Assembly: GCA_977030845.1 (NCBI GenBank)
Contig: OZ365112.1
Coordinates: 3,658,001-3,722,000 of the forward strand
Source: Fimbriosthenelais zetlandica
Taxonomy: Eukaryota
Length of the DNA stretch: 64,000 nt
Reading direction: 5' to 3'
In this document: one piece after another, positions 9,719-58,896 of the stretch
Layout of the letters: each line of letters starts with the position of its first letter
Position numbering within the stretch: the first letter of the stretch is position 1
Notes under the pieces: model-generated
Seen by the model: the letters and a program-made list of their open reading frames with translations, nothing else
Told to the model about the DNA's origin: nothing
Database searches by the model: none
Translations under genes and position numbers: made by a program

Positions 9719-9837
9719 GTACGGCGTGGGCCGCGGATGATGACGATGATTCTATCTACGATCCGCTCACACCGTGCTCGTCGGACGACACCTACCTCCC
9801 CACCACCCAACTCTACTACACCACCCCGCCCAAACAG
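9719..9837 (+). CDS. Internal coding exon (phase 1 to 0), TAWAADDDDDSIYDPLTPCSSDDTYLPTTQLYYTTPPKQ
   Basis: Acceptor tttttgatttgtag|, donor CAG|GTACGA; 119 nt of GC-rich sequence in an AT-rich background, open in the frame shown. Confidence 0.7.
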
Positions 9838-9856
9838 GTACGATCATAATGCATTA

Positions 9857-10152
9857 TAACCTCAACTCACTGAGCTACCATCTCCCTACGATCTGATATA
9901 TAGCCTGAACCCACTGAGCTACCATCTCCCTACGATCTAAACCTTTTGAGCTACGATCTCCCTACGATCTGCTCAAAATAAGAACGTAGAGTGTTCTGAT
10001 CCATGAAGGAAAACGCAAATCACACAGGAACATTACATTCCACATACATTTTCAGTAGGTTCATTCCACATTTGTCAGTAGGTTCCACATACTTTTAAAA
10101 TTGTGTTGTAATTGGATCGTAAAGCAGATCGTAGCTCAGTGGGTTCAGGTTA
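9857..10152. mobile_element. Probable MITE (family G) with ~30-bp TIRs and subterminal tandem repeats
   Basis: TAACCTCAACTCACTGAGCTACCATCT ... AGATCGTAGCTCAGTGGGTTCAGGTTA with TTA on both sides; three tgagctac(c/g)atctccctacgatct units in the left arm. Confidence 0.7.
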
Positions 10153-12525
10153 TTATAATTGTTGTACAATGGCTTGTGTGTCTGTACGGGCCAGTGATGG
10201 AGGTTTGGGGGCTTACGCCTCTAGCTGGCAGCACATCAATGTAATGCCGGGCGATTATCCAAGCGATAGCTGCGCGAAATTATATTTCTAGTCAGTTATA
10301 CTTATTAAGCGCAGCTATAGATATTATTAAATGATCATCAGGTTTCTATGATAGGGAAACTCAGAATAACTCGCAATATATATTCTATTTGACATCACAG
10401 AAGTAAGGGAAAGCTTATAGGTCTATTAAGTTACGCCAGATAGTACTCATAGTTCGTCTTTTATATTAAATCTGACAGTCGGGTCCATCCCACTGGAAGT
10501 TCTAAAAACTGCCGACTTGGCAAAAAAGTAAATCTTGGTCTGAGAAAAAAACATTGTTGGGTTTGTGATGGACTGAACCGCTCACCTCCATCGTTTGATG
10601 GGGAGTGGTGTGGCATTTCAGAGGTTTTCTATTTCAATTCATTCCTTTTTTCTCCATTGAGCAATGCATGCAGTGGGAGTATGGGGAAATATGTTCCACC
10701 ACTGTGTGCCACTATAGCTTTAGTGTTTTATTACAAAGGGACATCGGAATATAAGCCCTAACTTGAGCTGATAGTTGCATTTATTTTATAAACATTTATT
10801 TTTGCCTATAGATTTGGCGTACCGCCATGCGTTCAAAATAAGTGTTGTATATTTATTTTATTAACTTTTATAATCTTTCCACTGAGACAGGTTTTTAGTA
10901 CACATAATAACAGATCTTTCGTGTGGTATAGATTTTTTGCACTAATTTTCTCCCGCAACGTGAAGATGTAAATGGATATATAACTATAACTATAATAATT
11001 TGTATTGATATAGATTCCTTAAGTTCTTAGAGTAGCGATTTGAAATCGGGGAAGAATTTACTGATAAAATATTCTAGAATGAATGATTGATTCTTCAGGA
11101 CTGCCCCTCATCTATTGAATCTAGTGATTCCAGACCTTTTTGAACACGACTCATTATTGTTTTAAAAACAATCTAATTACAAAAAATAACTGACGTGTCG
11201 GTTGCTTTTTCCATTTTCCATTGAAATTGGAATCTAGTGAAAAAAGATCCGGTTGGTTAGCCTCCGGGTCAAAGTATCAGACCTTTGATAATTCAACCTT
11301 GACGTTTTTCATGGAATCGTTTTATTTATTTTCTATTTTTTTGATAAAACTTTAATAAATTTCCCTCCCATATCCCGCATGGAACATTAAACTTTCCCTG
11401 GGTGTTAGTAAATATAAAAGTTAATGATAAAAATAACCGCTGGACCTTGAAACATATCACATAGTAACTGACCCAGGCGCCGCGCGGAGTCACAAAGTAC
11501 CGTGGCCCATAACGACGTGGCTAAGGTTGAGTAATTAAAGTGTATCATTTATAGTTATAAATGATCAACTAGCCTCATACTAAAGCGGCTTATTTTCTCA
11601 CGGTCTGTGATGGGTCCAAGTTGACCTCGCCTTTTCATGGCGCGTATAAATGTTACTCCTGCCTGATCTCCTAATATCACAGTAAATAAATTCACGTCAA
11701 TCATTTACATAATGGGCCATTCATCATTTGTGAGCTGGGAGTTTGCTATGATATAAATCGTGAACCATGCTGGTTCTGTCCATTCAGGAGGTTGCCTATG
11801 AGGGCAGAAAGTTCAATCCATAATTGTCCCAGGCATTTCCCTCCCTCCCTCCACATCGTAGATATTCTAGAGCGCATGCCCCTGTCAAATATCCCTAGCA
11901 TGAAAGGTAACATGGATATTCCCATCTAAAGTGCCCCCAGCTAAAAATCATAATAAAACCTGAGAAAGCGTACATGCGCTGGTAGAACTAATGCAATGGT
12001 TCTATGAAAGAGAGCCAACTGAACCCCCTGGTTCCAACCAATGATGGGTCCCTCAGATCCAGTCCCTCTGCCCCCTCCCCCCACCCCCACCCTTGTCTAT
12101 AGGAAGATTAAGATTGCCCCTACCAGACGTCCAATTATCTCTTTTCTCACGCATGATATAGAAGTGTGGTGGGTGCTTGTACTGCCCCTACCGGCCCAAC
12201 CAGAACTACTATAGACCAGGCCGCTGAGGTATTAGATACGGCAACTTACGCAGATTAAATAATTATGTCTTCTACCTTCCCCCAATTTTGATTTCATTAA
12301 ACGGTTACGTCATTGAGGTGAAAAGCGCAAAAGCGACGAGAGTCATGCTTAAAGATGGAAAGAATTAAATTATATTATTCTGGTGAACAAATGGAAGTTG
12401 TGACTAGAATCTGGCAAGGTCGTTACAAAGTGAAAAGAGATAGAAAATCTGACTAAGGAAGAATAGAATGAAAAAGAAAGGAAGAGAAAGATTATAAAAC
12501 CTGTTATGCAAAAACTTGATTTAGT

Positions 12526-12620
12526 GGACCTTACTGAATATAAGGCAAATACACATTGAATAATAAGCCAAAAGATTGGCTTATTTTGGCATAAATATAT
12601 GCTATACAATGCCCATTCCC
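12526..12620 (+). repeat. ~95-bp dispersed direct repeat, copy 1 (copy 2 at 13830-13922)
   Basis: Shared ggaccttactgaa..taag.caa.tacacattgaataataagccaaaaga...tacaatgcccat. Confidence 0.85.
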
Positions 12621-13982
12621 ATGCAAACATATCCACAGAAAGTTAGGTTAAGTGGCTGGTATGAATTCAGCGATGGGTAGCCAGCTATAGGACATGTGTG
12701 TAGGACCCATGTTAGGGCTATGTAAGCATGGTGATCTGGAACTCTGTCATATATATTACCTACAGCTGTTACCTGGACAGGTGTGGTGTATGTCCCCCCC
12801 CCCCTATACCATCCTACCTGACATCTCACACCTCAATCACCTCCCACACAGTGAACACTGACTTTTACTGTTAATCACTGACAATATAGGAAACAATACT
12901 GACATTATAGGAAGCACCACTGACAGCAGATCACCACAGGAGATTCTCTATAGTCCATGTGTTCCTAAGCTGGACTCACTTCTCAATATATTGAGAAGTT
13001 TTTCCATATTGGATTCTTAATGCTGGATCCACTTGTCAATCTAATGCACCAGAGTTTTTCCTATTGGGTAAAGCAGACACCCACTTGTTGCCTATATACC
13101 AGTCTTGTTGCTTATGAGAAAAAATGGAAAATTTAACCTTAAAACGCGATGGATAGATAATGGCCAATATTGATCGAATCAGGTGTTTTTATGGTCAAAA
13201 TTTGACAATAACTTGTACGCCAACTTTATGTTGATTATCTATAGGATACTCTATGGATTGGATTGTATAGTTCATTAGGAATCATGAGGAATATTATAGA
13301 TTACTTTAAACAAGACAAGTTGGATTGGCGTGACAATGTGACAATATTTTGGGGTGCCTTTACTGTTCAGTGAATATGTTTAATTGTGTTTGAATGATAC
13401 CCTCTGGTCGTGATGATTTTAATTGAAAATGTCAAAGGCCCCATTTTCAACAGAGGGCCAGACTAAGTGAATTTAATAGGATGTTTAAGTCCATTTAAGC
13501 TTGGATTTACGCTTTATGTGGACGATTTTGACATTTCATTAGTCTGGAATATGCATGTGGACCTTTGGATCTTGAATGTGATTCTTGAAACTTGTAAAGT
13601 CTGAGAAAAGATCTTGATGCCTTGGATCTACTATTAATGCCTGACATCAATTATGACTGTCTTATGAATAATTAGGCTGGACATTGCAGCTATGTGGGAG
13701 TACAAGATATATCAATTTTAATATTTAATGTTGAAAAGTAACTATTCAGAAATCGCAAACTGCTATCATGAATATTCTGGCTGAACTTTACAACCAGTTT
13801 TGCAAAAACATTTAAAAATGATTCAGTTCTGGACCTTACTGAAAATAAGCCAAGTACACATTGAATAATAAGCCAAAAGACTGGGTCTGTTTGGCATGAA
13901 TATCGGCCATACAATGCCCATGTGTGGGATCTAGAGAAGCTTGGATATATAAAGTGTATTATTAAAAGTATAAACATTAATA

Positions 13983-28296: not shown

Positions 28297-28389
28297 ATGG
28301 GGTCCTCTCCAGGAGATAACCCTGGAGGAAGGAGTGGGGGACCGGATGAGGGAGAGGAGAGGGCATGGGGATCAACTCAAAAACCTCCA
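28297..28389 (+). CDS. Alternative first coding exon (phase 0), MGSSPGDNPGGRSGGPDEGEERAWGSTQKPP
   Basis: aagATGG context, 31 codons, donor CCA|GTGAGT; lies downstream of the X-box cluster. Confidence 0.5.
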
Positions 28390-28722: not shown

Positions 28723-28821
28723 ATGACAACGAGTAGTCCTTGGAGAGTTTACAAACCAGATTTTCATCTGGACTACGTCATACCTGACACTTCTTTAAAA
28801 CGTCGTTTTCTGCAACTTCAG
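28723..28821 (+). CDS. Alternative first coding exon (phase 0), MTTSSPWRVYKPDFHLDYVIPDTSLKRRFLQLQ
   Basis: 33 codons ending at perfect donor CAG|GTGAGT. Confidence 0.65.
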
Positions 28822-31124: not shown

Positions 31125-34100
31125 TTTCACACTATGCCTTGTAGTGTGTACCTGCCCTATAACTATTGTATTTATATCTTCTCCAGGGTATTATCTTCCC
31201 TCCTCACCCCCCCCCCCCACCCCTGGTGTCCCTGTTTCCCACCAAGTATCAAATATAACCAAGAAATTGACGTATCAGTGGCGAAGACTCCCTTCATATT
31301 GCCCCTACTGATTGATAGAGGTTTTTTGTTTCCAAGATAGTGCAATATATGAACTGCTTCTTTCAGGCTTCTTCTTTCAGGATGATAATGAATTTTCGCA
31401 ACTAATATTAGGATCTTGTCATTTTATGAAACGTCTTCTTGGTTTATGCAACGTAATAGGCTATCCCATTTATCCTGAATATGCCTGGACCTTACTAATG
31501 AGATAGTTTGACTGGATTTTCTATCACAACTGGCGCAAGTCTAACTGCACTAGCAGGAGCTTGATATTTGCCAGGGGTGTCTTTATAGGCATGTGTACAA
31601 CTGTGCACTGGCCTATGGTTGATAATGAGCTCTAATTGCGAGTGGAAGATATCGCAGTTGAGGCCGTAGAAAAGTCTGTCACAAGGGCTCGCCTCAGCAT
31701 CGCAACAATCGCAAAGCAATAGGTACCCTATTAAGGAGTTGGATTATCGAACCAACTTAAATTTGACTACCTATCTAAGAAGCCCATAATGGCATTTCAT
31801 ACGCGATTTTTACATAGAAGAAGCTGCATCCGTTTGAAGGCCCATTTATTAATTAATTACTAGTCCATAATTGCTAAATATTTATAAACCAATGGGGAAA
31901 ACACTGACTCTTTAAACTCTGGGAAATGCCAGGTGATTGTAAACTCCGTTTAAAAATTAACCTAGGTGTCATAAAAATACATGGATGGCTATCTCTCCCT
32001 CCATCGGTGATAAGCTTATTCCAGTATTAGTCACTGTCTACTGATCACTGCAAGTTTCTGGAGCGTGAACAACATGAAAAACACATGAGCTGAACTTTCA
32101 TTGTTGGATCTATGTTTTAAGACTTTTGTCACTGCCAGTTTTCATATCATGTGTCATCAGGCAACTGGGGAATTCCTGTCATAATAAATGGTTGTAGTTC
32201 TAAATTTATTTGCCTTACAAAGATATAGACAATCAAATTTTAAAAGGACTCATGGGGGCATTGTATGCCTTAGAAAATATTAAGATAAATAAAAAATTCC
32301 ACATAATAATATAGTCATATAATGTATAGATAGAAACAAATCAGATATAGATTGGCATTCATGTTCTATATAATCATTGTCAATACTGCCTATACTGGCA
32401 TAGTCAGGACTAGTATCCATGCACGCTCCATAAAAAAACCCACCCACGTACGGTATCCGACTAAATCAACATGATTAAAATCACTGACGTGGATCTTAAT
32501 GTGTATCACGAAATATCCAACAAAAAACCTCATCAAATGTCCATAAAATGTTCAATGTAGTTTGACGATGATCGAAATGCGTCAACTCCAGGGGTTGTTT
32601 CACAAAAATCCATAGACCTAAACTTGGTTTATTGATCAAACTTTTTTCCTTAATAATCCCTGTGAAAAGGGAGAAAGGGTGTGGGGTAAAGCTTTTTGGC
32701 GAAAGAAATTATTATCTCAGACACACAAAAGTTGGGGTCCATTGGCATTGCTGTGTCGGTCCCTGGGATATTATTTTTTCTTGTACAATCCCCATTGAAA
32801 GATTCATACATTTAGTCTCAAATATAATAATACTCGCGATTACCCATCCCATTTATCTATCCACAAAGATGAAAAACAACCAAAAAACAAAATGAAAAAT
32901 TTGATACTACTTCCCAAACACTTATCGGCACTCCAATCTTTTCCCGTATTGTACATTTATCAGTATGTGTAACCTTGTGTATAGTTCTAGTTGAATTTAT
33001 GATGGGATCATATAGTTGTACTTGTGTGTATGGTCTATCTATATTTTATTACCTTATTTCTAATTCATATATTGTACATGTGCTCACATGCAAGTCATGG
33101 ATATTGACGTGCATGTATTCAGACCAATCAATGGTAGAACGAGTCCTACATTGGACGTGTTTAGAAACAACACTTCATGATTGTTCACATTTGTTCACTC
33201 ATACCCATAGACTTCCATGTATATTTTATCCACATTTTTTCTCCTGAATGTATGGGATTTAGGAGACTCTTCCTCTAGGAGGGATACAGTGGAGGATACA
33301 AGGTTAAGATATAATTGGATTATCACGATCGAAGGAGGATTAAGGAGCTCATCTTGATGATTTAATCCTACCAGTAGCCTTACCTCGGAGGATTAGCTCC
33401 CCTACATATTATATATCCCATACAGCTAGGAGTATGAAAACACTTTGAACGAAGCTATAAGGAAACAAGTACATCTTGTTAAAAAACAGACGATCATTTG
33501 TCTCTCTTCTTAGAAAGAAGGATAATTAACTCTCGAAGGAGACTGTTGGATTGTTATGCACCTTGCACTCCATATCCAGGTGTGTCTGTGGGATCGCAGC
33601 CATAGATGCTTAAAGGTGTTTGGCAGGTGTAAGCCTAGGAGCTGTCCCTACATTAATTGTCGCAGTCAACACCACTAGAGGAACTAACCCAACCTGGAGC
33701 AACGAATTTGGCATCAATCCATATACCTCCTAATCCAAACAAAACATAATTGAAATACAAAGGAATCGTACTCAATATGTTATGGTCGATATATGTTATG
33801 AACCATATATGATCCTGTTGGAAGGTAGTATACCTTCTGTTCACACCTGGGTCATACCTGGGTCATATCTAATTAGTATACAGCTGATTGTAGTTAAGTG
33901 AGGGTGGGAGGGGGACCTACCCTACCTGGACACTACTATGATGATCACCTTCAAGGCATACACATGTCCTGAATGTTAAGTATACGAAAATACAGGTCGA
34001 TGTCCAGTTTACTACTGACCATTGGCCGGTTGAGATCATAATCTTGGGGACTTTCATAGCATTGGAATAATGCATAGTTCTAAATGCATGGAACTGGGTT

Positions 34101-34702: not shown

Positions 34703-36082
34703 CCCTAAAGCTGAAAGTAACCCAGAATATCAGCAAAGGTTGTCAGATAATTGGCTGTGAATGAATCGACGACCTCGTGAATATTGTATGCATCAGTAAC
34801 TGGCCTAACCTTGGCACTGCCTCACTCCAGGCACAACATGGCCAATATGACGGTTACCAATTTAACCTTCTCCTCCCATCTTCATATCTATACCGCATGA
34901 TTCCTATTAATACAGGAGCAGGTCTATATCGATCTCTTTCCGAATATGGACTCCATAATATGATACACCTAACATGCAAGGGTATTGCCTGGCAATTGTT
35001 TTCTTCAAATCTCAAAAAATAACATCCAGATTTTCATCTTACAATGACGTCTTACCAATGACGTCCAGGAAATCCAGGGCCCAAATACTTGCTTTTTAAT
35101 TAAATGAATCTGTATCCATCCTTCGAACATGCAATTTTATTCATGATTCGTTTCTTCATTCTGGAATTGCATAACGTTGTCAAATAGTACACCAATGTTA
35201 TGTTATGAACTTCAGAGTAAACACCGAAGACCTCAAGGGAATCATTGTTACTGAGTGTTACATCTAATTGAGTGACCGACTATGTCGTTTGACTGAAGAG
35301 TTAGACCCAATAAAGCCTTGAAAGTTGAAAGGTGTGTCTTTATTTAGACAGCGGGGCTGAAAAATCAATATGCACCTTTAACATTGAACCCCGTGCATGT
35401 GATGAAAATAAGAGCACAGTATAGGAGATATCAGCAGTTAGAAGTCAAAGGTACTGTATAGGAGATAGGAGATGATAGGGCTGATTGTGATGCTGCTGCA
35501 GCATCCATGTATGCACCATCAACCTATAGGTAACCCTATCTGAGACACATGCACGGCCACCTGTGCATTGCTGCAGTGCACTTGGGCTACACGCACCTCG
35601 GACTTGCATTACTGATGCATTATATAGATCTTAGCACCTATTTTTTACCTCAAAGGTAGGGAAAGAACCAGGTAGCGTTCCGACAGTAGGAGACATTATT
35701 AGCACACAGTACACTACCTGTGAAGACTTACCTGTGAATGTGTCAAGGAAAAGACTACACCCACCCGCTCTCAGGGATTATTAGGATTTGATTCAACCAC
35801 AGGAATGTACCAGTATTTAAACAGATAATCCTCAATAATGGTTTTTTGTGTATTTACCTATATGTCACCTCACTGAGAGACATGCCTGTGATTCCTTGGA
35901 GCAAGTACACATATGTGTTCATGGCAGCTGAAGAAATGGAGATATAAATTGATCACACATATTTGGATGCAGTGAATAAGATGTTATCCGCTTGAGTCAG
36001 GAGTCATGGGGTGCATTTCCCTGTCCATACATATCTGGACTGTAATCGTGCTAATTTCCTAGAGCACAACAACAAGCAGAGC

Positions 36083-36778
36083 ATGGAAAAGGTACCCAAT
36101 GATAAAAGGCCCACCCTGGGGATGAAGGGGGTCACTGGGGGGCTTTCTCCCTGCCCCACCCCCACTACAACCCCCCTCTCCCCACGACCTTACATAAAAC
36201 CATCAACCCTCCTCTGTCCCACTCATTCATACGAACCCGAACGATTCCCTTTCCCGACGAAATCGGAATCAAAATCCTACCTAAAATCCCCAAGGAGTCA
36301 AAGACATGGGAAGAACCAATTACCCCTGCCATCCCCTGCTTCTCCAGTGAGTCCCATAAGGGGTTCACTGTCACCTTCCCCTAGCAGATCCCCGGAGGGA
36401 TACACATGTACCCCACCAGGTACCCCTCCATGTACCCGGGATACTGGTCAGGAGGGATCTGATGTGCCTTCAATCACTATAGAGGTGGACAGTGGCGAGG
36501 ATGACCAGGATCCAGAGATCCTGTCCATAAATGAACCACCCCTGGAGTTGGAATCACCGGGGACGCATCTAAAGGTACCTGAAGTGACACTTGTCCTACC
36601 AGCAGTCACTCTGGAGGTACCCAGGAGGAGTAACGAAGACCCAGGACCAAGACTTAGTAATCCTTTTGATAAGAAAAGAAGCATGTCGGACGGTGGGGCC
36701 TATCATAGGCCTATCTTCAGATCACATTCAGCTAGAGGGCCTAAGGATATACCTTTTGTGATCATCACTAAATGCAAG
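36083..36778 (+). CDS. Large alternative first coding exon (phase 0), 232-aa Pro/Ser-rich, probably disordered N-terminus, MEKVPNDKRPTLGMKG...RSHSARGPKDIPFVIITKCK
   Basis: Longest non-repetitive ORF in the window (36011-36844); agcATGG start; donor AAG|GTAATA; many SP/TP and KRSMS/RSHS motifs; composition turns AT-rich after the donor. Confidence 0.78.
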
Positions 36779-38123: not shown

Positions 38124-39307
38124 CTGGTGCCAATTTTTTTTTCAAGTTTGTAATGTTTGAGATCTTTGCTATATCCAGCTCACTGCATGAGCTGAGACTG
38201 GGGAATATATGAACTAACCTAACATAACTGTAGGCGGTAGAACAATAATATTTGTATTGGCTTCTCCCGCCTGGTCTGGAATACAACATGAGCAAAATTG
38301 GCTAGCAGATCACGTTTATTTGTGGTTTCCAAATATCTTATTTTCATACCTTTCGGTGGATATATCAAAGGTTATGCTATATTTATCTAGCATCTAGCAT
38401 ACTACTGCATCGATAAATCTATTGAAATTCATCAAGATTGAATGCCCAAAATTATTATGTTTTTTATAGAAAGACCTTTGCAATTCAGGAAGATCAGGTA
38501 TCAAACTATGCCATTTCATAACTATGCTTCAACATAGAGTGAACTATAGCTTAAGATTCAAGAAAGAATATTGTATCAGAAATGAAGGAAAATGAAGAAG
38601 AAGAGTTAAACTGATGGGATTTTGCATGATATAGCAATACCATTCACAAACAATAGGAAGAAAGTTAAAGAACTGAAGCATTCATAGCACTTTCCACTCA
38701 GAATAGACAGACTGGATTGAATGTTGAGAAAAGAATTAATGTGCACTCTAGAATTACGAAGGACAAAAATTGGTAGAATGAAATGAAATTCCCATAGCAC
38801 TTTCTCTTGGGAATACCTGCAGTGGATTAGAGTGGGCTATTGGTCAGTGGACCGTTTCAGCGTGAAACATTCCCATAGACTCAGCATTGCTGATGACTGT
38901 AGTGAAACAGGCTCCAGGTCTGAGCAGCTGGTCCGGTATTGAGATATATAAAGCCTTAGTCCGCTTATAAATACACCAGGAATATCCTGACATATGCTGG
39001 CATTTACATCATCACGAGCAAGCATGTCTGGCATATAGACGGACAAATTGGAGTGAGCCCATCTGTCTTCTACCTATACAAGAGGATGGGTGGGTTGGGG
39101 GGGATGGGTGGTGGGGGATAGGCTACTGGTAGCCCGTAGACATGTATTGCTGGGATGCTTTCCCTGATAATGAGTCTTTTTTTCCATTTTCTCCACTGTT
39201 TTCAGCATAGAAACTGCAGAAATTTAAGCCATTTTCAAAATAATTCTGTTGCGAATTTAAGTATAGTTGCCGATTGTTATATAGGAATACTATATATAGA
39301 CCCGTTA

Positions 39308-39518
39308 AGCCGGGACTCCACTGCTGCGATTTTGCTTGCGACACTAGTGCGACAAAGGTGATGCTTGTGAAGTTGTGTAGGAATAAAATTTATAAATTGT
39401 GGTTCAAGTGTCCAAGGCCTTACGGCCGTCCTCCAATGGTAAATTTATCATTGAAACACAAGCATCACCTTTGTCGCAGACGTGTCGCAAACAAAATCGC
39501 AGCAGTGGAGTCCCGGCC
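39308..39518. mobile_element. PIF/Harbinger-like MITE family A, intact copy
   Basis: TSD TTA/TTA; same length (211 bp) as, and only a few substitutions from, 15663-15873. Confidence 0.92.
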
Positions 39519-40526
39519 TTAGAATAATTTCTCTTGAGGAAGACTCCCACACTCCCCCAGTGTTCAGTTCACCCCCATGGCACCCCTTGCCATAAAAATA
39601 ATTTATCGGATTCCCCCCGCCTTACCTATCCACGATGTACAATGTTAAAGATTTCCCTCTTTCATCCCAGACACGTCGGCCCATCTGTTCCCCTGGGGAT
39701 TGAAGCATTCCCAGTATGATCCCCGCCTCTTCCCAAGGAGCTCCGTGCTGGCACTACATGGGTCCCATCCAGGTGTGAATGTACTAAATCACCCCACCAG
39801 ACACTATGTGAACCCAAACCAAACCTTTTTTTTTTTTTATTTTTTTATTAATCTAATTTATCCAGGAGGTATAATCACTGTAAGATTATAACAAGGCCCT
39901 TCGGGAGCTAGCCCGGTCTTCCAGGACCTTCCTGCTTTTAAATAACAAAGTTTAAAAATAGCCTGGTATCAAAATGATGGAAAAAGAATAAAGTAAAAGA
40001 TTAAGTAATTACATAGAATAGATTATTTAAGCAATATACTAAACTTCAAATTTAGACCTGTCATATAAAATAGGGAATATATATATACAGGGACGAAGAT
40101 ATGTACATATTTACATATAGGATTATCTGAGCAGAGTTAAATAAATATAATTAATTATACAAATATTCATTCATTAGGAAATATGATTTAAGGGATGCAC
40201 GGAGACGTACACACAGAACCTACAGCCGTAAATAGACAGACAATTGCAAGGCTTAGTTAATTATATAGATAGATCACTGTATGGGCGCTGACGGCACACC
40301 ATTACAAAAAGAAAAGGGATGAGAAAGGTGTAAGGGGGGGGGGGGGAAAGAAGGTCGGTGGTGAGGTAACCTTACATATATTTATTTTTAAAAACGTTGT
40401 CTAGCTTTGGTTGTCAAATTGAGATGTACCTAACATATCATTTTTTATGTAGCCCACACACTGCTACTACACTGCACATTATAAGATTAAACATAGACGT
40501 ATAGAATATAAAAGTTGTTTCGTTAG

Positions 40527-41045: not shown

Positions 41046-42883
41046 AGTGATAATTCATCAAGCCTGAGAGTAGGCTAATAGTTTGACCCTATGTTGGGGT
41101 CAGGATGGGTCCATATTGAACCTGAGTATCCCACACCCTCCCTGACCCCTCTACTCACCACGATGAGTCAGTAATGAGCTGCTCATTCTCCACAGACGCT
41201 CCATATACCTGCTGGATGCTCCTTCCATAACTTACCTCTCACTTTCTGATAAATCTTTTATTATATCCATAAATTTATACCACTGGCACATGCTAGGCAA
41301 TCAAAACTTATATATTTCGTCTACTCGCAGGTAGACGCGTCCCCACTTATAAGTGATTATCCAAGCGATACCTGCGCGAAAATATATTTCAATTTACACA
41401 CAATGCTTGTAATTATGTCATTGGTTAGCCTTAGCTAATCTCTAAAATTTGTATCAAGAAAACCCAAAATTAATCCCCTTCATATGCTAAAGAAATACAT
41501 AAGTAAGAGACCAAACATCGTGGCATGAAATTGCCAAAAATATGAAATCTTTGTCCGTAATCTGTTTCTACAGGACATTTGTAAACCGAAAATTAATTCC
41601 CCTTATAGGCTATGCTAAAGAAATGCATTCGAAAGAGACCAAATAACGTGGGAAAAGTCCGTAAGCTGTTTCTACCAAACATCTAGCACCTGTCAAATTT
41701 AAAAGAAAATTGTGCACTAAAAACAGGTCTTCACAGTTTATCTTCTTGGTCAGCGATACTCTTTAGCTAACAGTTTTACATCCTGCTACTTTGAGATATA
41801 AATGGCAGATGATGAGGAGATATCATTGAATATACAGGACGTGATCTGTTCGTGTTTTGTGGTTAACTCGTGGCTTACAGCCCTCGTGGCTCCCTGCCGT
41901 GTGATGACGTGTTGATGGACGTCAGGTTGACGTTAGGTACGACGTCTTAACGTCTGATCAGACGTTAGCTGATGGATGGTAACGTTCACAGTGAACCCGT
42001 CTGCCCTGTCACGCCCTCTCTTGGCGGGAGCGGGAACTACCGACTAGTGCTATAACAGTAGTTAGTCTTCTGAGATGGAAAATGTCTGAATTTATTTAAA
42101 ATTAAATCATTTGAATACAATTTATATGATCCCTGGCATTGAAGGGTTATCAGATAATTGGATTGAATGGAGAAAAATAAAGTGGATTGAACTCTAGATG
42201 ATATTTAACCCGAATCAATTTTAAATCTTATCTTGATTTGGACCGATCGGTCTGACCCTCCATGTAGGCCTACCTTTATTTATTTGTATATAACGAACCA
42301 AAGTGGTATAGATTTCTTTTTATATTTGGAAATAATACAGTCAGTTCTGTAGCACTGTGTACACTTGGATAATATGGAGATTCAAATAGAGATCTATAGG
42401 TTCAGGTGATTCCATTTAATAATGAGATCGTATCATATTTTATCTGAATTGTTCCACTCATCTAATTTCCAGCCCAATAAAATATTCATAAATAGGCCCA
42501 GTGTAATTATCCTGCAGTTTATTTATAACGAAAATTGGCATGACTTTTCACTACGGTTATTACTATAAATATTGTTCATTAATTATGAATTCGTTGAATC
42601 AATCTATTGATGTAAGTTTATTTTTATAGTAAAATGGATTTACGTTACTTTTTATTGCATTATCCTCACGGCAGGATATGATTCAAAGAGTTCTCCTTGA
42701 CTCCTGGGAACACGTCATCCCCCCCCCCCCCCCACCCCACCCCACCCCCCCCCCCCCCAATATAAACAAACTTAGCCTGCACCCCAGCAGCCTAACAGCC
42801 CCTATTCATCTAGTACCACTTTACCCCTCCAGGTGCCACCCCGCGTTATCTCTCCCCGCGTTCTAATTCAAGCTCGCCTGTTA

Positions 42884-46370: not shown

Positions 46371-46535
46371 NNNNNNNNNNNNNNNNNNNNNNNNNNNNNN
46401 NNNNNNNNNNNNNNNNNNNNNNNNNNNNNNNNNNNNNNNNNNNNNNNNNNNNNNNNNNNNNNNNNNNNNNNNNNNNNNNNNNNNNNNNNNNNNNNNNNNN
46501 NNNNNNNNNNNNNNNNNNNNNNNNNNNNNNNNNNN
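46371..46535. other. Assembly gap
   Basis: 165 N. Confidence 1.
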
Positions 46536-46970
46536 ATTAAATCATAGAACTATATAGAGGCTATATACATGTAGTTCTATGACTAAATCTAGCTATGGCA
46601 TTTATTCCATGCAGTTCTCTAACACCTATAGCCACTTTGCGATGGTACAGAACCAGCAAAGAGGCTGCAAGTTCCAAATATAGATAAACTTCGGCACAAG
46701 ACAATGAAGTGACGCACGCAATTCCACTTCTCTACGTATTCCACACTATTTTTTATTATTATTATTATTTAGGATGTTTATACAGCGACATATAAGGGTC
46801 ATAGGCTCACGGGGCACAATGTATGTGGCTATTCCATGGTATTCTGCCTATTGCTGTTTTTCTAGGTGCAGACTCAGTGGGGGGTGTGTATAGTGGGTTA
46901 GTAGAAAGATTGAGGTTGTTAGTACAAGTGCCCAAGGTCTTAAAAAAAATAAATAATAAAAGAGCATTGG

Positions 46971-47049
46971 GCTCTCTGTCACAAGTAGGCACCGTCATGA
47001 TATAACTGAAAAATTGTTCAAAAGTGACGTTAAACCCCATTCAATCAAT
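46971..47049 (+). mobile_element. 3' fragment of the SINE at 30830-31124
   Basis: ctgtcacaagta...accgtcatgatataactgaaaaattgtt.aaagtgacgttaaaccccattcaatc is shared. Confidence 0.85.
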
Positions 47050-47502
47050 AGTACAAGTGTAATTAGATGAGTTAAACTTGGATTGAGAGCGATGAGAGTG
47101 ATGGGTTGTGTGAAAATGATAATGGAGTTGTGTGAAAATGATAATGGAGTTGTGTGAAAATGTTAATGGAGTTGGGTGGAGTTGGGTGAAGGTGAGTGAG
47201 GTGATTGGGCAAGGCTGTGTCACAAACAATGCCCATTTTGGTGAACATTTGATCAGTTAGTATCGGCGGTAGTCCTTGGAAGTACTTGGAAATAAATGCT
47301 CAGTTTAATGTTTGTCATAATTGCGTGGGTTATGAGGAATGTGGATGGACGGAATGTTAGGATCTGGTTGTGATAATCTTTATTTTAATCTGGTTGTGAT
47401 AATCTTTATTTTATCTGATTTACTCAACTAGATCTCACCTCTGGTCGCGGTGTATTGAGAATATCTGAACATCAGTAATTAACTGACATATTTCTAACTT
47501 CA

Positions 47503-47630
47503 NNNNNNNNNNNNNNNNNNNNNNNNNNNNNNNNNNNNNNNNNNNNNNNNNNNNNNNNNNNNNNNNNNNNNNNNNNNNNNNNNNNNNNNNNNNNNNNNNN
47601 NNNNNNNNNNNNNNNNNNNNNNNNNNNNNN
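47503..47630. other. Assembly gap
   Basis: 128 N. Confidence 1.
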
Positions 47631-47750
47631 CTTTCTTTCCTACTTTCTTTCTTTTATCTTTGTTTATTTCTTTCTTTCTTCTGTTCTTTCTTTCATTCTT
47701 TCTTCCCTTCCTTTCTCATTTCTCTTTCACACACACACTCTCTCTCTACC

Positions 47751-47924
47751 NNNNNNNNNNNNNNNNNNNNNNNNNNNNNNNNNNNNNNNNNNNNNNNNNN
47801 NNNNNNNNNNNNNNNNNNNNNNNNNNNNNNNNNNNNNNNNNNNNNNNNNNNNNNNNNNNNNNNNNNNNNNNNNNNNNNNNNNNNNNNNNNNNNNNNNNNN
47901 NNNNNNNNNNNNNNNNNNNNNNNN
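47751..47924. other. Assembly gap
   Basis: 174 N. Confidence 1.
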
Positions 47925-48409: not shown

Positions 48410-48627
48410 AGCCAGGAATACACTAATCCGTTTCTCTATGATCTATCCGGAGCCATCCGATAGCTGTCCGAAACTAGATTTCTATTCGCACCAAATGCTT
48501 GCAATTCCAACAGTCCTTTACACCTAGGTAAGGCTAACCACTGACAAAATTTCAATCTTTAGATGCCATTAGAAATAGGGTATCGGATGGCGACGGATTG
48601 GAGAATCGGATTAGTGTATTCCCGGTT
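48410..48627. mobile_element. PIF/Harbinger-like MITE family B2
   Basis: Same TIRs and core as 16924-17134; flanks TTA/TAA. Confidence 0.9.
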
Positions 48628-49090
48628 TAAAAATTAAACCAGCACAAATTCACCCAGCCTGGAAGTGGAACTGCGCTTGATAGTCATATGATAATATTGT
48701 CTGCGTTTGTTTCGGATCAGAGCTAGACAAGAATGGAGAATTCTTTAATTCACCAATTTAAAGTTCCCTTCAGGCATAAAATGTACATACATTTCACTGA
48801 TCTCCTCCTCCATGATTCGCTGAATTCTGAGTCGGAGTTTCCACCCTTAGCCACCCTCTAAACACACCCCCACCCTCATTCCTGCTTCAATTTCTTCTTA
48901 TTGTATTTCAGTTTAACCATAAATTTATATAACTTTACTTCTTGAATCGGATTTGATCCCTAATCTTTATTGCAAAAAATATTGTCATTAACCAGTCGTA
49001 AAATAGAGAAAAATAGTTATTAGTTATTTTTATGAAACACCACCCTGTTTCACAAGCAGCGATAATAGCTTGACAGGCAAAGAAAGAAAA

Positions 49091-49897: not shown

Positions 49898-49999
49898 ATG
49901 TCTGTCCTGACAGGGACATCGGAGGACCTTCAGGACCTTATGTATACTTTCTATGGTGGCCCACATCTCCCTCTGGTGTATTGTTACAATGGATTAGAA
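49898..49999 (+). CDS. Candidate first coding exon (phase 0), MSVLTGTSEDLQDLMYTFYGGPHLPLVYCYNGLE
   Basis: 34 codons; weak donor GAA|GTATAT. Confidence 0.25.
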
Positions 50000-52043
50000 G
50001 TATATAGACTTCTATTTACTGATGAATCTTCAGAGCATTCCTCCGTACAATAGGTTCCCCCATGGATAACATTATACATATACACAAGACTCCTTCTTCT
50101 TCAGACCCTCTGAAAACCCAGCATTTTTGGACAGTTGAAAACAGCAGTGCTTTCCCATAGCATCACAGTCCCACTGAGGAATATTTTGGATCATTTCTTT
50201 GAGATGTAATAAGAACTTAAACCTGTAAACCAACCATCCCTCCACTGGAAGCTATAGTTCATTTTGATATGGAATCGAACTTAAATTTTTGAAAAGATCT
50301 TAACCTTTTTATGAACTGGAGATATCTGGATGCATTGCACTTTGGTGTAGGTATATGACCTTCGGAAAGTAGCGCGATTGGGAAACTTATTTTTCATTGC
50401 CAAAAAATAGTCCAAAGGAACCGATTGGATGGGAATTGGCACAGGATGGAACCTCCCTTTAATTGTTCACTGGAAGCTTACAGTTCCGTACATCACCATA
50501 TCCGCTTTCTCAGCCATGATATATATCACTTAAATGTCAAGAAAAGCTATTATTTAACCTTGTTGATCTACTATTACAAACCCACTGTCACCCAAGTGTT
50601 GAAGATGCAATGATTAAACCTTAAATCGTTCCATAAATCAATTAGGTCGGCTGCTACCTCAACCACAAAAATTACCCACATTTAATAATTATTTCGGCGG
50701 ATTTATCTGTGGGATCCGGGAAGCTTTTGAGTGTCGAGACAAGTTGATATGAACACTTTGTATCTGTGTACACTCACTATTCCATGACGCCCGAACGAAA
50801 CAATTTATTTACAATCTAAACAACTGATAACAAATCTACATCTATTTTTGTTATCTGTGTTGATCCTCCCTCACCCAACCATCTTTCCCATCCTTGTGCA
50901 ATATTTATAAATGTCAGAAATACTTTTGGAAATTACCCGAAATCTCCTCGGCATCCTTCTAGAACGGTGCCTATAATTGATCGGAAGCCCTGATTATGAA
51001 TTAAAACTTGAGAAATACGCTTCATAATGGAAATCTTATCAGATGTTATCATTGTATAGCTATTGTATATAAGAAGGCTCCATTTTCATGGCCACTCATA
51101 CATCCAAGCAACGTTCAAAGTCTATTGTTAACAAGGATCAAAATGCAACAAGTGTTTCGAGGAAACTTTCTATAGGACTCCATCTGGATCTCTACGAATT
51201 TAAAATCTTTTTTATTTATTTCCCAATCTATGGACTCTATTTACTCGATTTATATCCCAGTATTGGATCAATATTTAAGGAAATTCTTAAAGAAAGTATG
51301 ATAATTTGAGCTGGATGTATTTATATGTATTAAGTGGGCATGGATAGCCTATGGTCCATACATGTATACACATGTTTAGAGAGAGAGAGAAGATAGATGA
51401 AGCAAAGGACACGGTTCCTGCTCTTGGCTACAACTCTAGACCACATCCTCTCTGTCCCGCTATAACTGGTGCTACACTCTATACTTGGATCCTCTCTCCC
51501 CTCTCTTCTGTCTTCTAAACATTTTCACCCCAGCCGGGACTTGGACAGGTGCTACATGCCAACCACAATAGCCAGGGATGTACCTTTGTGCCACCCCATA
51601 CATAGGAATCTCATAGACTCCCGAGAGTTTTAACTTTTAACTTTGGATCTCAACTCTAATGCATTAATGTATAAGGATTATGCAACAGAGACTTGTTGAT
51701 GAGAATACCATGGATATTATATGAATTTATTTTTGGATTTTTTTTCTGAATGAATATACCAAGGAAATGACTGTGATATTTTAATTGTGATATTAGTGTA
51801 GGCCCATTTAACTCTTCTTTGATGTGAGAGAAAGTACTGTAACTTGGCAAGGGATGATGAATGACAAAGCATTGGACTGTAATTTAGGGTATTTAAACTA
51901 CATACAGTTAAAACTCAATGGAATCAAACCCCAACGGAATCACATGGATAATATATAAAAATACAAATGATACACTATGGGAATATTTTAGTGGATTTGC
52001 TTCATAATTTTTATCGAATAGGAAATTAATTTTAAAACTGACA

Positions 52044-52256
52044 ATGAGTCGACGTGGTCGTAGCCCCTCGACATTACAGCCGGATATGGCTCTGGTGCCT
52101 CGAGTGCGCATGCGCTCGCGCTCGGTGGGTTTCCATGGCAGCAATATACAATCTCTGGTGTGGAAAGCCATGCATAATATGTTCATATTGAGACGTGTAC
52201 CCTGGTACCAAGGCGTCTTCAAACATGTCTACCCTCTAGATGTGGTCGATGGCGAT
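52044..52256 (+). CDS. Alternative first coding exon (phase 0), MSRRGRSPSTLQPDMALVPRVRMRSRSVGFHGSN...HVYPLDVVDGD
   Basis: 71 codons in a CpG-rich island, donor GAT|GTAAGT. The real start may be the in-frame ATG at 52170, since NRF1-like (GCGCATGCGC) and X-box (GTTTCCATGGCAGC) motifs lie in the 5' half. Confidence 0.7.
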
Positions 52257-55200: not shown

Positions 55201-55552
55201 AGAATAATTTGAAGTGCACCCAAATATTTTGTGCCTTATTTCATGAAATCTTGAAAAAGTGAATCTGTTGGACTGAAATTGATATAAATATTCAGCTTTA
55301 AAAAGTTCTTAAAAGTTCCTCAACTTCTGCCCTCTGACGCTGAGAGAACCTTATTATCTAAACCTGATTATTATGGTTTATTGAAAAGAAGACGAAAAAT
55401 TGATTTCCTGCCAATAAATATAAATATTTGTTATCAAAATCAAAATTATTTGGAACGATGTGGCGCCAAAATGGAGAGAAGTGACAAGCTGGCCCTCCCA
55501 GATGGCCCGGCTGACCTTGTCTTACTAACATGTATACACACACCACTGACCA

Positions 55553-55695
55553 ATGGTGGAAGACCTCCCATATATACCGACCACCTGGTCAAGTCCAGAA
55601 ATGTTACCTATGGGACCAAACAAGAGGCGTTGCCATGGGAACCAACAGTTGTCAGGGAATAGCCATAGCAACTGTGACAATCTCTATGGACACTG
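55553..55695 (+). CDS. Candidate first coding exon (phase 2), MVEDLPYIPTTWSSPEMLPMGPNKRRCHGNQQLSGNSHSNCDNLYGH
   Basis: 47 codons + 2 nt, donor CTG|GTTAGT; overlaps X-box GTTGCCATGGGAAC (55629-55642). Could join the acceptor at 56152|56153 (open as YLTAIDLRVTVVTS...) or skip to the phase-2 acceptor. Confidence 0.35.
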
Positions 55696-57030
55696 GTTAG
55701 TATTGTCTCGGGTTTCGGGGGAAGTACATGCCTTTGTTTACATACAAATTGCTTATTTTAATAGGATTTTCAAAGGATATTTCGTCTGTTGTCATACTCC
55801 TATCTTCTGTGGATATATCAATATTTATATTCTCATATAGCCTAAGGATGTATATCCAATATCTTTCTTGATATTCAATACTTACAATATTGAATATGAA
55901 TGTTATATTGACTATCAGTTTAACTACATTGTCTTGAATAGATTGCCTATATTTGATATTCACAATTGGAAGAATGACGGCCATCTTGGATTACCATTTC
56001 AATAAATTCATTTATGGATAAATTCACACATTTCTGAAGTCCTATTTGTCAAAACATTGGAATTAATATCCAGCGAGGAGTGGATGAATGAGCTCGTCTG
56101 AGATGAAATTGGTCAATAGTCTTGATGTGTTATTGTTTTACAATTGACGCAGGTATTTGACTGCCATTGACCTTAGAGTGACAGTAGTGACATCAGATAG
56201 TCGGGGATGGTTGTCACCCTGGCTGTCAGTCGTGTCACCTACATCCGGAGACGCTAGCACTGACGCGATACCTGGTGGGCCTTCCACAAACCATATCCCT
56301 CCCGCCTCCACAAGTCTGGAGAGGCAATGTAAAACAAGTGCAGGACCATTGTGTCCATTGCTTCCAGAGAGATCCGGACATAATTACATGATTTAACTAA
56401 ACGTATCAACATTTTCATTGACCATTTATCTATTTAAGTCTATATCCCTCCCATAGACTAGGGGAAAAAATGGCTCATTTAGTGAAATTATCTTATGACA
56501 ACCTGCGGCCTAGACTTGAATACATACATGTTCTGATATTGTGAATCTTCCAAAATAATCCAAACCAAGAAGGGACTGCAATTATTGCTGTGTTATATAT
56601 AGGATTTGTAGCGGTTGTTAAGCCAAACACCTTATAATAAAAGTATGATCATCTTCAGTAGACAGCAGAAATATCTCAAGTATAAAGACTAAATTACATG
56701 GCAATCATTGTTTGTGACGCACACATTGTTTCCCACTCCCGGGCGTTCAATTAGCCTCTGATGGCACTGTGGGAAATGATTATTTCTCCACATAAAAAAC
56801 GCGCATTGCAGAAAATTCTATTAGTCCATTTTACCTGGCGTCATTCTTCAAGTTTAATAAAACAAACTTTTTGAATTAACTCAAAACAACTATTGTTGAC
56901 TCCACCGATATATATATATATATAATATATATATGTTTTATAATATTTAGATTAAAATCTAAAGGTATTCCCAGGCTTGTCAATCGGAAGGAATGAAAAT
57001 AGAAATTACCTGACTTTTAAGTAGCAGACT

Positions 57031-57198
57031 ATGTTCTCTGTGCCTCCTCGGAATTATATTCTACTATTATTGGACGAGGAATGGGACCCAATCCTTGAGA
57101 ATAAAGTAGAAATCGAGACGGATGACAAATCTAGATTGCGATCCTGGTCCTGCTCAGCCGCCCTCTCCCCACGTATTTCACAGAGGCGTTTGGCACAG
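57031..57198 (+). CDS. Alternative first coding exon (phase 0), MFSVPPRNYILLLLDEEWDPILENKVEIETDDKSRLRSWSCSAALSPRISQRRLAQ
   Basis: 56 codons, donor CAG|GTATAT; protein-like composition. Confidence 0.62.
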
Positions 57199-57472
57199 GT
57201 ATATAGAATTGGCTATCATGAAAGTTAATTATTTTAAAAGTATATAATAACTTGTGGAGTTATTTGATTTAGGAAAGCTTAGGAATAAATAGAAAGTCAA
57301 TTTAAGTCGCTTTAAATTCAGCACAATGGATAATATGTCTCCCACTCACTATTAGATGGAGAATCTCTGGTTATAAACTGATTTATTGAGTATGGCGGAT
57401 CGTTGCATTATGACGCCTGGGACGTCTCATGAAAAACCTCTTTTTGTAAATACGAAGACAATTGTACAAATC

Positions 57473-57660
57473 TGTACTCCACTGCTGCGATTTTCCTTGC
57501 GACACTGCTGCGACAAAGGTGGCGTTTGTGTGGTAATGAAAAATGTGCAAATGGAGGACGGCCTTAAGACCTTGGACCATAATTTATTAATTTTATTGCG
57601 ACACAAGCATCACTTTTGTCGCAGTACTGTCGCAAGCAAAATCGCAGCAGTGTAGACCTG
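57473..57660. mobile_element. MITE family A copy (opposite orientation, eroded ends)
   Basis: ctccactgctgcgattttccttgcgacac ... tgtcgcaagcaaaatcgcagcagtg. Confidence 0.85.
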
Positions 57661-58245
57661 AGATCCATTGTCATGACTGTGTAACATGTTTAGCCCCTTA
57701 ATCAATGATGTGGGTCATGAGGTCTCTAATTCATGTTCACTAATTAGACTGTTGTTAATTCCTCATGTAAATACCGCTCTCTACCGTATGACATGTATTG
57801 ACAGCTCCAGTCATATTACCGTAAATACAAGCGCAAATTACATCCCCTATACGGTATTCCCCGACCCACTGCACCCCCCCCCCCCCGACACCCTCCCTTG
57901 TCGCTCAAATTCTCACTCGAGGCTATAGCAACTCGTTGAACGTGTGAAAACCACTCGTGCCAAAGCATTTCCAACACGTACGTGTGAAATTATCACATGA
58001 GATCAAATATAATTTTTTTTGATGATTTTTATTTCTAAACTTAACTTTGATCTAGCTGGCGCGCTTAGATTTCTTTATAAGATATACGGTAATGTAATGA
58101 AGTCATTGAGTATGATTTGTTATATAGAGAGTGGTGGGAATCTAGACCATCACAAGGATGGAGCGCTTCATTGGAATCTCTTATACCGTACCAGCATTAC
58201 ACGGATGCTTCCAGTGATTGTTTAGAATTTATATCTGTACCCAGA

Positions 58246-58323
58246 ATGAAAATGGATACGTTTAAAGTGATTCTTTATGGCAACAAAGCCGGTGGGCGTT
58301 ATAGCATGGGCATCCTCCTCGAG
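58246..58323 (+). CDS. Candidate first coding exon (phase 0), MKMDTFKVILYGNKAGGRYSMGILLE
   Basis: 26 codons, donor GAG|GTCAGA, 535 bp upstream of the shared exon. Confidence 0.35.
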
Positions 58324-58858
58324 GTCAGATGAAAAATCTAATTTTAGTAATATTTCTTTAATTGTTTCTTCGATTTTACTTCCTTCTTCGGTGCGAATAC
58401 TACAGAGCGATTGGAGCTGAAAGTGAAATGCTCTGAATGATGCTCTTCTTTCCTTCGGTTAAATCTTAGACATTTCCTCGATCCGGGCATTATCAATATT
58501 TCTGCCATTTCTGAGTTTAGAAAACCTTTTCCATCCCCATTCTTCCCAGTAAGACTCCGGGATGATCTCAATTTCGCACTGAGGATCTTACATTAAAATC
58601 CATTTTATTTATTGTCTTAAACATCCAGACTCTTCTATATATATATAGCCTACTGACGACATAGACGTTCTTCCTAAAACCACTAGGAAGTAGTGATCTC
58701 AAAATGAGACAGATGTAAACATGTTAAAGTGAATCATAGTTGAAATCTGTCATGGTCATTTGATAAACGTTAAAAACTCCGACAAGATGGATAATTCTGA
58801 GCGTAAAAATAATTTTTGGAGGAATATTTTGTCTAAATTGTTCCCCTTTGTTTTCCAG

Positions 58859-58896
58859 CAGATGGCCACGACACCTAACTCTGAAGATGGAAGGAG
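58859..58896 (+). CDS. Shared 38-nt exon (phase 0 to 2), QMATTPNSEDGR(S/R), with NAGNAG acceptor
   Basis: Acceptor ttcccctttgttttccag|CAG|; perfect donor GAG|GTGAGT; open in phase 0. Confidence 0.75.

What the first reader, a model, noticed from the sequence alone, without database searches (positions are those of the whole stretch)
9719..58896. Large array of phase-0 variable first exons converging on one 38-nt exon
Seen: well-supported ORFs ending at 9837, 14162, 28389, 28821, 36778, 52256 and 57198 all end at a GT donor in phase 0. So do weaker candidates ending at 18901, 19150, 20649, 20843, 26225, 27848, 37449, 43017, 49312, 49999 and 58323. The only clear downstream acceptor exon (58859) is open in phase 0. 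The N-termini are unrelated in sequence (7 to 232 aa), so they are not duplicates. Established: variable-first-exon loci exist (clustered protocadherins, UGT1A, plectin, PDE4). Inference: one gene with roughly 7-18 promoters in ~50 kb, an unusually dense N-terminal cassette system probably under-annotated in this lineage.
Basis: partly seen in the sequence, partly recalled or inferred. Interest (0 to 1): 0.8.

Follow-up and report, generated by a model that had tools for sequence, protein, structure and literature searches.

The report
Several alternative first exons, one proven
This looks like the long front end of one invertebrate gene on the plus strand that can probably start from several different first coding exons, an ordinary kind of gene layout; only one of those exons is proven real and the claimed 7 to 18 is too high.

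Summary
All 18 listed ORF ends do sit at a GT in phase 0, and 58859-58896 is the best acceptor/donor pair in the window.

ATG-to-GTRAG ORFs show no plus-strand phase-0 bias, and the 11 weaker candidates are at chance level. 9719-9837 has no ATG but has an acceptor, so it is an internal exon.

One exon is proven. 36083-36778 (232 aa) has a 229-aa counterpart in a distant species (E 1e-73). Its last 92 codons have dN/dS of about 0.03, and conservation stops at the donor.

Five more are supported only by statistics: 13983, 28297, 28723, 52044 and 57031, with 58246 weaker.
- They are GC-rich ATG-ORFs with decent donors and no usable acceptor.
- 7 of the 8 phase-0 ORFs that pass the filter carry A at -3 (p 0.0014).
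- Such units are 2-6 times commoner on the plus strand than in controls.

No transcripts could be checked. The gene body lies beyond the window, so the gene is unnamed (PDE4/dunce-like is a guess). Three assembly gaps lie between the proven exon and 58859.

Verdict: an ordinary alternative-promoter architecture with about 3-8 first exons.

The parts
9719..9837 (+). Candidate internal exon (119 nt), not a first exon. It has an acceptor ttgtag| and a donor cag|gtacga. Two frames are open: phase 1 in/0 out, and phase 0 in/2 out.
   Evidence: GC is 0.61 against 0.34/0.41 in the flanks and CpG o/e is 1.24. Donor PWM 8.7, acceptor 3.2. No cross-species test was possible.
13983..14162 (+). Candidate alternative first coding exon, 60 aa, phase 0.
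   Evidence: A at -3. Donor ccg|gtaagc scores 9.7, among the top 8 donors on plus. GC is 0.53 against 0.33/0.40. No acceptor upstream: best AG score is -9.9. The homologue search was blank.
20736..20843 (+). Weak candidate first exon (36 aa, phase 0) inside a CpG-rich island that carries YY1-type and USF E-box motifs. It may be a promoter element rather than coding.
   Evidence: T at -3, donor 6.4. CCGCCATCTT at 20698 and GTCACGTG at 20638 and 20830. CpG o/e 1.1-1.3.
28297..28389 (+). Candidate alternative first coding exon, 31 aa, phase 0.
   Evidence: aagATGG context with A at -3. Donor cca|gtgagt scores 7.2. GC is 0.58 against 0.44/0.37. No acceptor. The peptide is Gly/Pro/Glu-rich and partly low-complexity.
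28723..28821 (+). Candidate alternative first coding exon, 33 aa, phase 0.
   Evidence: Donor cag|gtgagt scores 12.6, the best donor on the plus strand of the window. A at -3. No acceptor: best AG score is -9.2.
36026..36082 (+). Conserved 5' flank (short leader or core promoter) of the verified first exon.
   Evidence: The DNA alignment with L001 begins here. Nothing further upstream in 4.5 kb aligns.
36083..36778 (+). Verified first coding exon, 232 aa from ATG to donor aag|gtaata in phase 0. The N-terminal half is disordered and Pro/Ser-rich. The last 92 residues are very conserved and carry RRS, KRS and RSHS motifs.
   Evidence: P0001, 229 aa from Logan runs ERR14368245/48/49: E 9.5e-73 and 3e-73, 63-69% identity. 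The start MEKVPN/MAKVPN and the donor are conserved, and similarity ends at the donor. pN 0.079 against pS 0.735 in the last 92 codons. No Pfam, PDB or Atlas family.
52044..52256 (+). Candidate alternative first coding exon, 71 aa, phase 0, with a perfect NRF1 palindrome inside it.
   Evidence: A at -3. Donor gat|gtaagt scores 7.8. GC is 0.53 against 0.33/0.36. CpG o/e is 1.02 against 0.34. GCGCATGCGC at 52106, the only copy in 64 kb. No homologue found, and the Atlas was uninformative.
57031..57198 (+). Candidate alternative first coding exon, 56 aa, phase 0.
   Evidence: A at -3. Donor cag|gtatat scores 6.4. GC is 0.48 against 0.33/0.38. No acceptor. The homologue search was blank.
58246..58323 (+). 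Weak candidate first exon, 26 aa, phase 0.
   Evidence: It passes the composite filter with A at -3, donor 6.5 and GC contrast 0.09. There is no other support.
58859..58896 (+). 38-nt internal exon, the proposed common acceptor. It goes phase 0 in and phase 2 out and encodes QMATTPNSEDGR plus 2 nt. It has a tandem cag|cag acceptor (58859/58862) and an in-frame ATG at 58862.
   Evidence: Acceptor PWM 8.9 ranks 4th of 3667 AG on plus, and donor 11.6 ranks 3rd of 3248 GT. It is the best AG..GT pair on either strand. GC is 0.53 against 0.36/0.29. It is not verified by transcripts or conservation.
46371..47924 (.). Three assembly gaps (46371-46535, 47503-47630, 47751-47924) with repeat-rich flanks, lying between the upstream and downstream groups of exons.
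   Evidence: Tandem repeats on the flanks are listed. No proposed exon lies within 1 kb.

Best explanation
The window is the intron-rich 5' part of one plus-strand gene whose body lies beyond base 64000. The gene is transcribed from several alternative promoters.

Each promoter is followed by its own first exon. That exon carries a start codon, a distinct N-terminal peptide of about 30-230 aa, and a donor site in phase 0. These exons have no acceptor site, so a transcript that starts upstream skips them. Each then most likely splices to the first shared acceptor, the 38-nt exon at 58859-58896. That exon shifts the frame to phase 2 for the next shared exon, which is outside the window.

The result would be one protein core with interchangeable, unrelated N-termini, probably for targeting or regulation. 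Several of the peptides carry basic-Ser motifs.

Shown: 36083-36778 is a real coding first exon under strong purifying selection. Its start, donor and phase are conserved in a distant species.

Inferred from statistics only: 13983, 28297, 28723, 52044 and 57031 (58246 and 20736 more weakly) are further first exons, and 58859 is their common acceptor. My estimate is 3-8 first exons, not 7-18.
For: The verified exon has a homologue at E about 1e-73. Its start and donor are conserved, dN/dS is about 0.03 over 92 codons while synonymous sites are saturated, and nothing else in 5 kb of the related contig aligns.

58859-58896 combines a top-4 acceptor with a top-3 donor only 38 nt apart.

ATG-ORFs in GC-rich islands with donors number 17 on plus, against 3/6/9 in the reverse-complement, reversed and complement controls and 4.6 +/- 2.1 in local shuffles. 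An excess of 1.3-3 times persists over a grid of thresholds.

Among the phase-0 units that pass the filter, 7 of 8 have A at -3 against a 30% background (p 0.0014). The fraction rises from 0.31 to 0.73 to 0.88 as the filter tightens, in phase 0 only and not in the controls.

Of the nine independent A(-3) islands, seven are in the phase of the verified exon, which I calculate at about p 0.008 from the and 66 lists.

None of the core units has a usable acceptor. They are unique and mutually unrelated. A perfect NRF1 site lies at 52106, and a YY1/USF cluster at 20.6-20.8 kb suggests promoters.
Against: I chose the composite thresholds after seeing the candidates.

Homologue searches for 52044 and for 13983 plus 57031 were blank. 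The comparison species is saturated at silent sites, and short ORFs may not have been called there, so this is weak evidence against.

Generic codon scoring was inconclusive. GC-rich islands are very common in the window, about 100 of them. No transcript, CAGE or junction evidence was available. The gene is unidentified. Three assembly gaps separate the proven exon from 58859.
Confidence: 0.55

Rival explanations
1. There is only one real first exon here (36083-36778), with perhaps 9719-9837 and the 38-nt exon as further exons. The other phase-0 ORFs are chance open frames in GC- or CpG-rich islands that are regulatory elements (enhancers, non-coding promoters) or plain compositional noise.
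For: The simple phase null is flat. About 100 GC islands lie in 64 kb, many with longer ORFs on the opposite strand; 13693-14100 on minus, for example, gives 136 aa. The homologue searches were blank. NRF1 and YY1/USF motifs lie inside the putative exons, as expected for regulatory DNA. The Atlas gave nothing for 52044.
Against: It does not explain the plus-strand excess over three natural-sequence controls. It also does not explain the phase-0-specific enrichment of A at -3, or why the strongest plus-strand donor in the window (28821) and another top-8 donor (14162) sit exactly at the ends of such ORFs.
Confidence: 0.3
2. The islands are first exons, but not of one gene. They would be several independent transcription units on the plus strand (small genes, lncRNAs, nested genes), or the scaffold would join unrelated loci across the gaps.
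For: Three assembly gaps lie at 46.4-47.9 kb. No junction evidence exists. The gene body was not seen. There are also 5 phase-1 and 5 phase-2 units on plus.
Against: No second set of internal or terminal exons, no protein domain and no other strong acceptor/donor pair exists in the window. Agreement in phase with the verified exon and with 58859 is what a shared acceptor predicts.
Confidence: 0.1
3. The listed ORFs are consecutive constitutive exons of a single transcript.
For: They are all on one strand, with several donors in the same phase.
Against: No usable acceptor precedes any core unit: the best AG scores run from -12 to +0.7, below the 95th percentile (1.7) of all AG sites in the window. 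In-frame stops lie 2-29 codons upstream of each ATG. In the related species, conservation of the verified exon begins at its ATG and leader.
Confidence: 0.03

Closest known systems
PDE4 / dunce-type alternative-promoter genes (human PDE4D; Drosophila dnc)
   Same: Unrelated isoform-specific first exons, each with its own start site, are spread over a long intron-rich 5' region and join shared downstream exons. The other note on this window proposes a second tier of shorter starts further downstream. The N-termini carry basic-Ser kinase-type motifs. PMC5342582 treats nine major human PDE4D isoforms, each with its own first exon and promoter. PMC7230524 gives dnc as 167 kb, 94.8% intron, with 17 transcripts.
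   Different: Membership is untested. No UCR1, UCR2 or catalytic sequence lies in the window. The 38-nt shared micro-exon is not a feature I can document for PDE4. The resemblance is of architecture only.
DLG2 and similar neuronal scaffold genes with multiple coding first exons
   Same: Several promoters have unrelated coding first exons that are easily missed by annotation (PMC5518101, title and abstract seen).
   Different: No PDZ, L27 or other domain was seen. The gene body lies outside the window.
Clustered protocadherins and UGT1A variable-exon arrays
   Same: Many first exons, each with its own promoter, converge on constant exons. An exon is skipped because variable exons lack acceptors.
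   Different: In those loci the variable exons are tandem paralogues that encode whole domains. Here the peptides share no similarity and are short and mostly disordered. The defining feature is not met.

Membership tests
Alternative-promoter / variable-first-exon gene (general architecture) | Two or more first exons, each with its own ATG and a donor but no acceptor | tested here: met
   Core units 13983, 28297, 28723, 36083, 52044 and 57031 each have an ATG with A at -3, donors of 6.4-12.6 and no usable AG upstream. Only 36083 is proven to be an exon.
Alternative-promoter / variable-first-exon gene (general architecture) | All first exons end in the phase accepted by one shared downstream exon | tested here: met
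   All end in phase 0, and 58859-58896 is open in phase 0. The agreement is above chance only for the filtered core set, not for raw ORF counts.
Alternative-promoter / variable-first-exon gene (general architecture) | Transcripts that start at each first exon and splice to the shared exon | not testable with these tools
   No RNA-seq, CAGE or cDNA of this organism was reachable. The only related contigs are unspliced genomic DNA.
Alternative-promoter / variable-first-exon gene (general architecture) | An independent promoter in front of each first exon | tested here: inconclusive
   A perfect NRF1 site lies at 52106 and YY1/USF motifs at 20.6-20.8 kb. A conserved 57-nt leader lies at 36026-36082. 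The other units have nothing diagnostic.
Clustered protocadherin / UGT1A-type variable exon array | Variable exons are tandem paralogues of one another | tested here: not met
   All-against-all BLASTP and BLASTN of the candidates gave no significant similarity.
PDE4 / dunce | UCR1, UCR2 and the PDE catalytic domain downstream of the variable N-termini | tested here: inconclusive
   No FD[VL][ED]NG, RRESF or SFLYRS motif occurs in any frame of the window, and no Pfam domain. The gene body would lie beyond base 64000, so absence here decides nothing.

The most novel reading that the evidence does not exclude
An annelid-type gene packs seven or more promoter-plus-coding-first-exon cassettes into about 45 kb. 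The cassettes are unrelated to each other, all are in phase 0, and all feed a 38-nt micro-exon. A second tier of starts bypasses that exon in phase 2. At least one N-terminus (the 232-aa exon) is deeply conserved yet absent from the annotated proteins searched. That would be one of the densest arrays of non-paralogous N-terminal cassettes described in an invertebrate.
Probability: 0.25. Interest if true: 0.55.

Novelty: new member of a known kind. Interest (0 to 1): 0.4.

Why it matters
If several of these first exons are real, gene annotation in this lineage is missing a family of N-terminal isoforms. One of them is a 232-aa module under very strong selection, which no protein in the searched libraries shares apart from an unannotated ORF in one other species. 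Isoform-specific N-termini usually decide where a signalling enzyme or scaffold sits in the cell. Identifying the gene and its promoters would give a tractable invertebrate example of promoter-driven protein diversity. It is still a known kind of architecture, not a new mechanism.

Tried and rejected
1. Naming the gene failed. Pfam gave nothing for the 232-aa exon, the 9719 exon or ten long ORFs. The search of 1.84 billion representatives returned only P0001 and a low-complexity HERC-like hit. The Atlas, PDB sequences and two metagenome scans gave nothing. PDE4 motif scans of all six frames gave nothing.

2. Cross-species tests of other candidates were blank: the 52044 ORF, and the 13983 and 57031 ORFs as a two-row profile. 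These are weak negatives, because silent sites are saturated between the two species.

3. The 4.5 kb upstream of the homologous exon in L001-L003 has no block, and no ORF, similar to any window candidate.

4. A generic codon log-likelihood by frame barely recognises even the verified exon, so I dropped it as uninformative.

5. GC islands alone do not discriminate; there are about 100 of them.

6. The reading as consecutive constitutive exons is rejected, because there are no acceptors.

7. The reading as a paralogous variable-exon array is rejected.

8. The reading as a transposon or dispersed repeat is rejected for the core units. The MITE-like families lie elsewhere, although 57392-57532 overlaps one.

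9. Rfam found no RNA family.
Full report
**What the window is.** The window is about 40% GC and rich in simple repeats and MITE-like elements. It holds no Rfam family and no protein domain in any long ORF. Earlier notes of this scan describe the genome as invertebrate, probably annelid. I did not test that.

**Check of the observation.**
- 58859-58896 is a 38-nt unit with ttttccag| in front and gag|gtgagt behind. It is open in phase 0 as QMATTPNSEDGR plus two bases.
- 9719-9837 has no ATG in the stated frame. It begins at an acceptor (ttgtag|), so it is an internal exon candidate and not an N-terminus.
- The three assembly gaps (46371-46535, 47503-47630, 47751-47924) lie in repeat-rich non-coding DNA and touch no proposed exon. 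They do lie between the upstream exons and 58859, so linkage across them rests on the scaffold. I did not try to fill them.

- Unique ATG-to-GTRAG ORFs of at least 7 aa, by phase 0/1/2, number 19/13/13 on plus (verified exon excluded) and 20/28/12 on the reverse complement.
- At 30 aa or more they number 6/2/5 against 7/7/3.
- Raw counts with any GT run to about 500 per phase on both strands.
- The weaker candidates are short (7-23 aa), or have poor donors (26225 scores -0.1, 49999 scores 1.8), or lack GC contrast.

**What is proven.** The 232-aa ORF at 36083-36778 has a 229-aa counterpart, P0001, in Logan assemblies of three runs of another species (E 9.5e-73 and 3e-73).
- The start is conserved (MEKVPN against MAKVPN), and so is the donor AAG|GTAAT.
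- Protein similarity ends exactly at the donor. DNA similarity begins about 57 nt upstream of the ATG.
- Nothing else in the 5-kb related contigs matches the window.
- In the last 92 codons pN is 0.079 and pS is 0.735, which is saturated, so dN/dS is about 0.03.

This is therefore a real first coding exon that ends in phase 0. It has no Pfam, PDB or Atlas family. Apart from P0001, nothing credible turned up among 1.84 billion representative proteins; the one other hit is a low-complexity repeat.

**The shared exon.** I scored splice sites with a generic metazoan matrix. The acceptor at 58859 scores 8.9, the 4th best of 3667 AG sites on plus. The donor after 58896 scores 11.6, the 3rd best of 3248 GT sites. 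Together they form the best AG..GT pair on either strand. A tandem cag|cag gives a second acceptor at 58862, and an in-frame ATG sits there too. It is very likely an exon. That it receives all the upstream donors is inference.

**The other candidates.** A composite filter asked for an ATG-ORF of at least 25 aa, a donor score of at least 6, GC at least 0.08 above both flanks, and no low complexity.
- It finds 17 units on plus (8/5/5 by phase). The controls give 3 on the reverse complement, 6 on the reversed sequence, 9 on the complement, and 4.6 +/- 2.1 in composition-preserving local shuffles.
- The excess of 1.3 to 3 times holds over a grid of thresholds.
- The eight phase-0 units are 13983, 20736, 28297, 28723, 36083, 52044, 57031 and 58246.
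- One feature was not used by the filter: seven of the eight have A at -3 of the ATG, against 30% for all ATGs (p 0.0014).
- That fraction rises from 0.31 to 0.73 to 0.88 as the filter tightens. It does so only in phase 0, and not in the controls.
- None of the core units has a usable acceptor in its open frame, so they can only serve as first exons.
- They are unique and unrelated to one another.
- 28821 carries the strongest plus-strand donor in the window (12.6), and 14162 one of the top eight.
- A perfect NRF1 palindrome lies at 52106. A YY1/USF motif cluster lies at 20.6-20.85 kb.

Four points weigh against this.
- I set the thresholds after seeing the candidates.
- Homologue searches for 52044 and for 13983 plus 57031 were blank.
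- Generic codon scoring was uninformative.
- GC islands are very common in the window.

**Most likely mechanism.** Alternative promoters each drive a first exon that carries its own start codon and N-terminal peptide. These exons lack acceptors, so transcripts that start upstream skip them. All join the first shared acceptor in phase 0. The 38-nt exon then passes on phase 2. I estimate 3-8 such first exons, with confidence 0.55 that at least three are real.

**Rivals.**
- Only 36083 is real and the rest are chance ORFs in regulatory or GC-rich islands (0.30).
- The units belong to several independent transcription units, or the scaffold is mis-joined (0.10).
- The ORFs are consecutive constitutive exons (0.03), which the lack of acceptors rules out.

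**Comparison with known systems.** The layout works like PDE4D and Drosophila dunce. PMC5342582 covers nine major PDE4D isoforms, each with its own first exon and promoter. PMC7230524 gives dnc as 167 kb, 94.8% intron, with 17 transcripts. It also resembles DLG2, which has multiple coding first exons (PMC5518101, seen). Membership in PDE4 cannot be tested, because the gene body lies outside the window and no UCR1-type motif is present. The locus is not a protocadherin/UGT1A-type array, because the variable exons are not paralogues.

**Verdict.** This is a plausible and ordinary alternative-promoter 5' region with one proven, strongly conserved and unannotated N-terminal exon. The claimed size of the array is overstated and no transcript evidence was available. 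Those are unverified.

Noticed in passing
window 446-628, 15661-15878, 39306-39523, 57473-57655: A MITE-like element of about 218 nt with terminal inverted repeats of about 62 nt. Two copies are 97% identical, and the others are 72-83% identical in either orientation. A second dispersed family lies at 232-418, 9321-9423, 14196-14352, 16949-17137, 41342-41437 and 48442-48628.
   Followed up: partly
window 52106-52115: A perfect NRF1 palindrome, GCGCATGCGC, and the only copy in 64 kb. It lies inside a CpG-rich island (o/e about 1.0-1.2) that coincides with the 52044-52256 candidate exon.
   Followed up: partly
window 20550-20900: A CpG-rich island with CCGCCATCTT (a YY1-type motif, oriented for the minus strand), a second GCCATTT box next to GTCACGTGAC, and another CACGTGAC. 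It looks like a promoter, possibly bidirectional or minus-strand.
   Followed up: no
window 61499-61905: A 135-aa ATG-ORF with A at -3 ends at a donor (score 7.5) in phase 2. That matches the 'second tier' of the other note on this window. The Atlas search gave only weak bacterial 'hypothetical' look-alikes, so there is no support for it being coding.
   Followed up: partly
window 33514-33579 and 39671-39772: Two further plus-strand AG..GT pairs with good scores (6.5/10.0 and 8.1/8.4). Both are open only in phase 1 in/1 out, so they do not fit the phase-0 set. They could be cassette exons or chance.
   Followed up: no
window 1-2100: The first 2 kb are 51% GC. They hold a 30-nt tandem repeat (69-244) and long CCCT/CCCCA-type low-complexity runs (1630-1965). 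This could be a promoter region for the transcript that contains exon 9719-9837.
   Followed up: no
window 58859/58862: A tandem acceptor, cag|cag (NAGNAG), could add or drop one Gln. The ATG at 58862 could serve as a start codon for transcripts whose first exon is non-coding.
   Followed up: no
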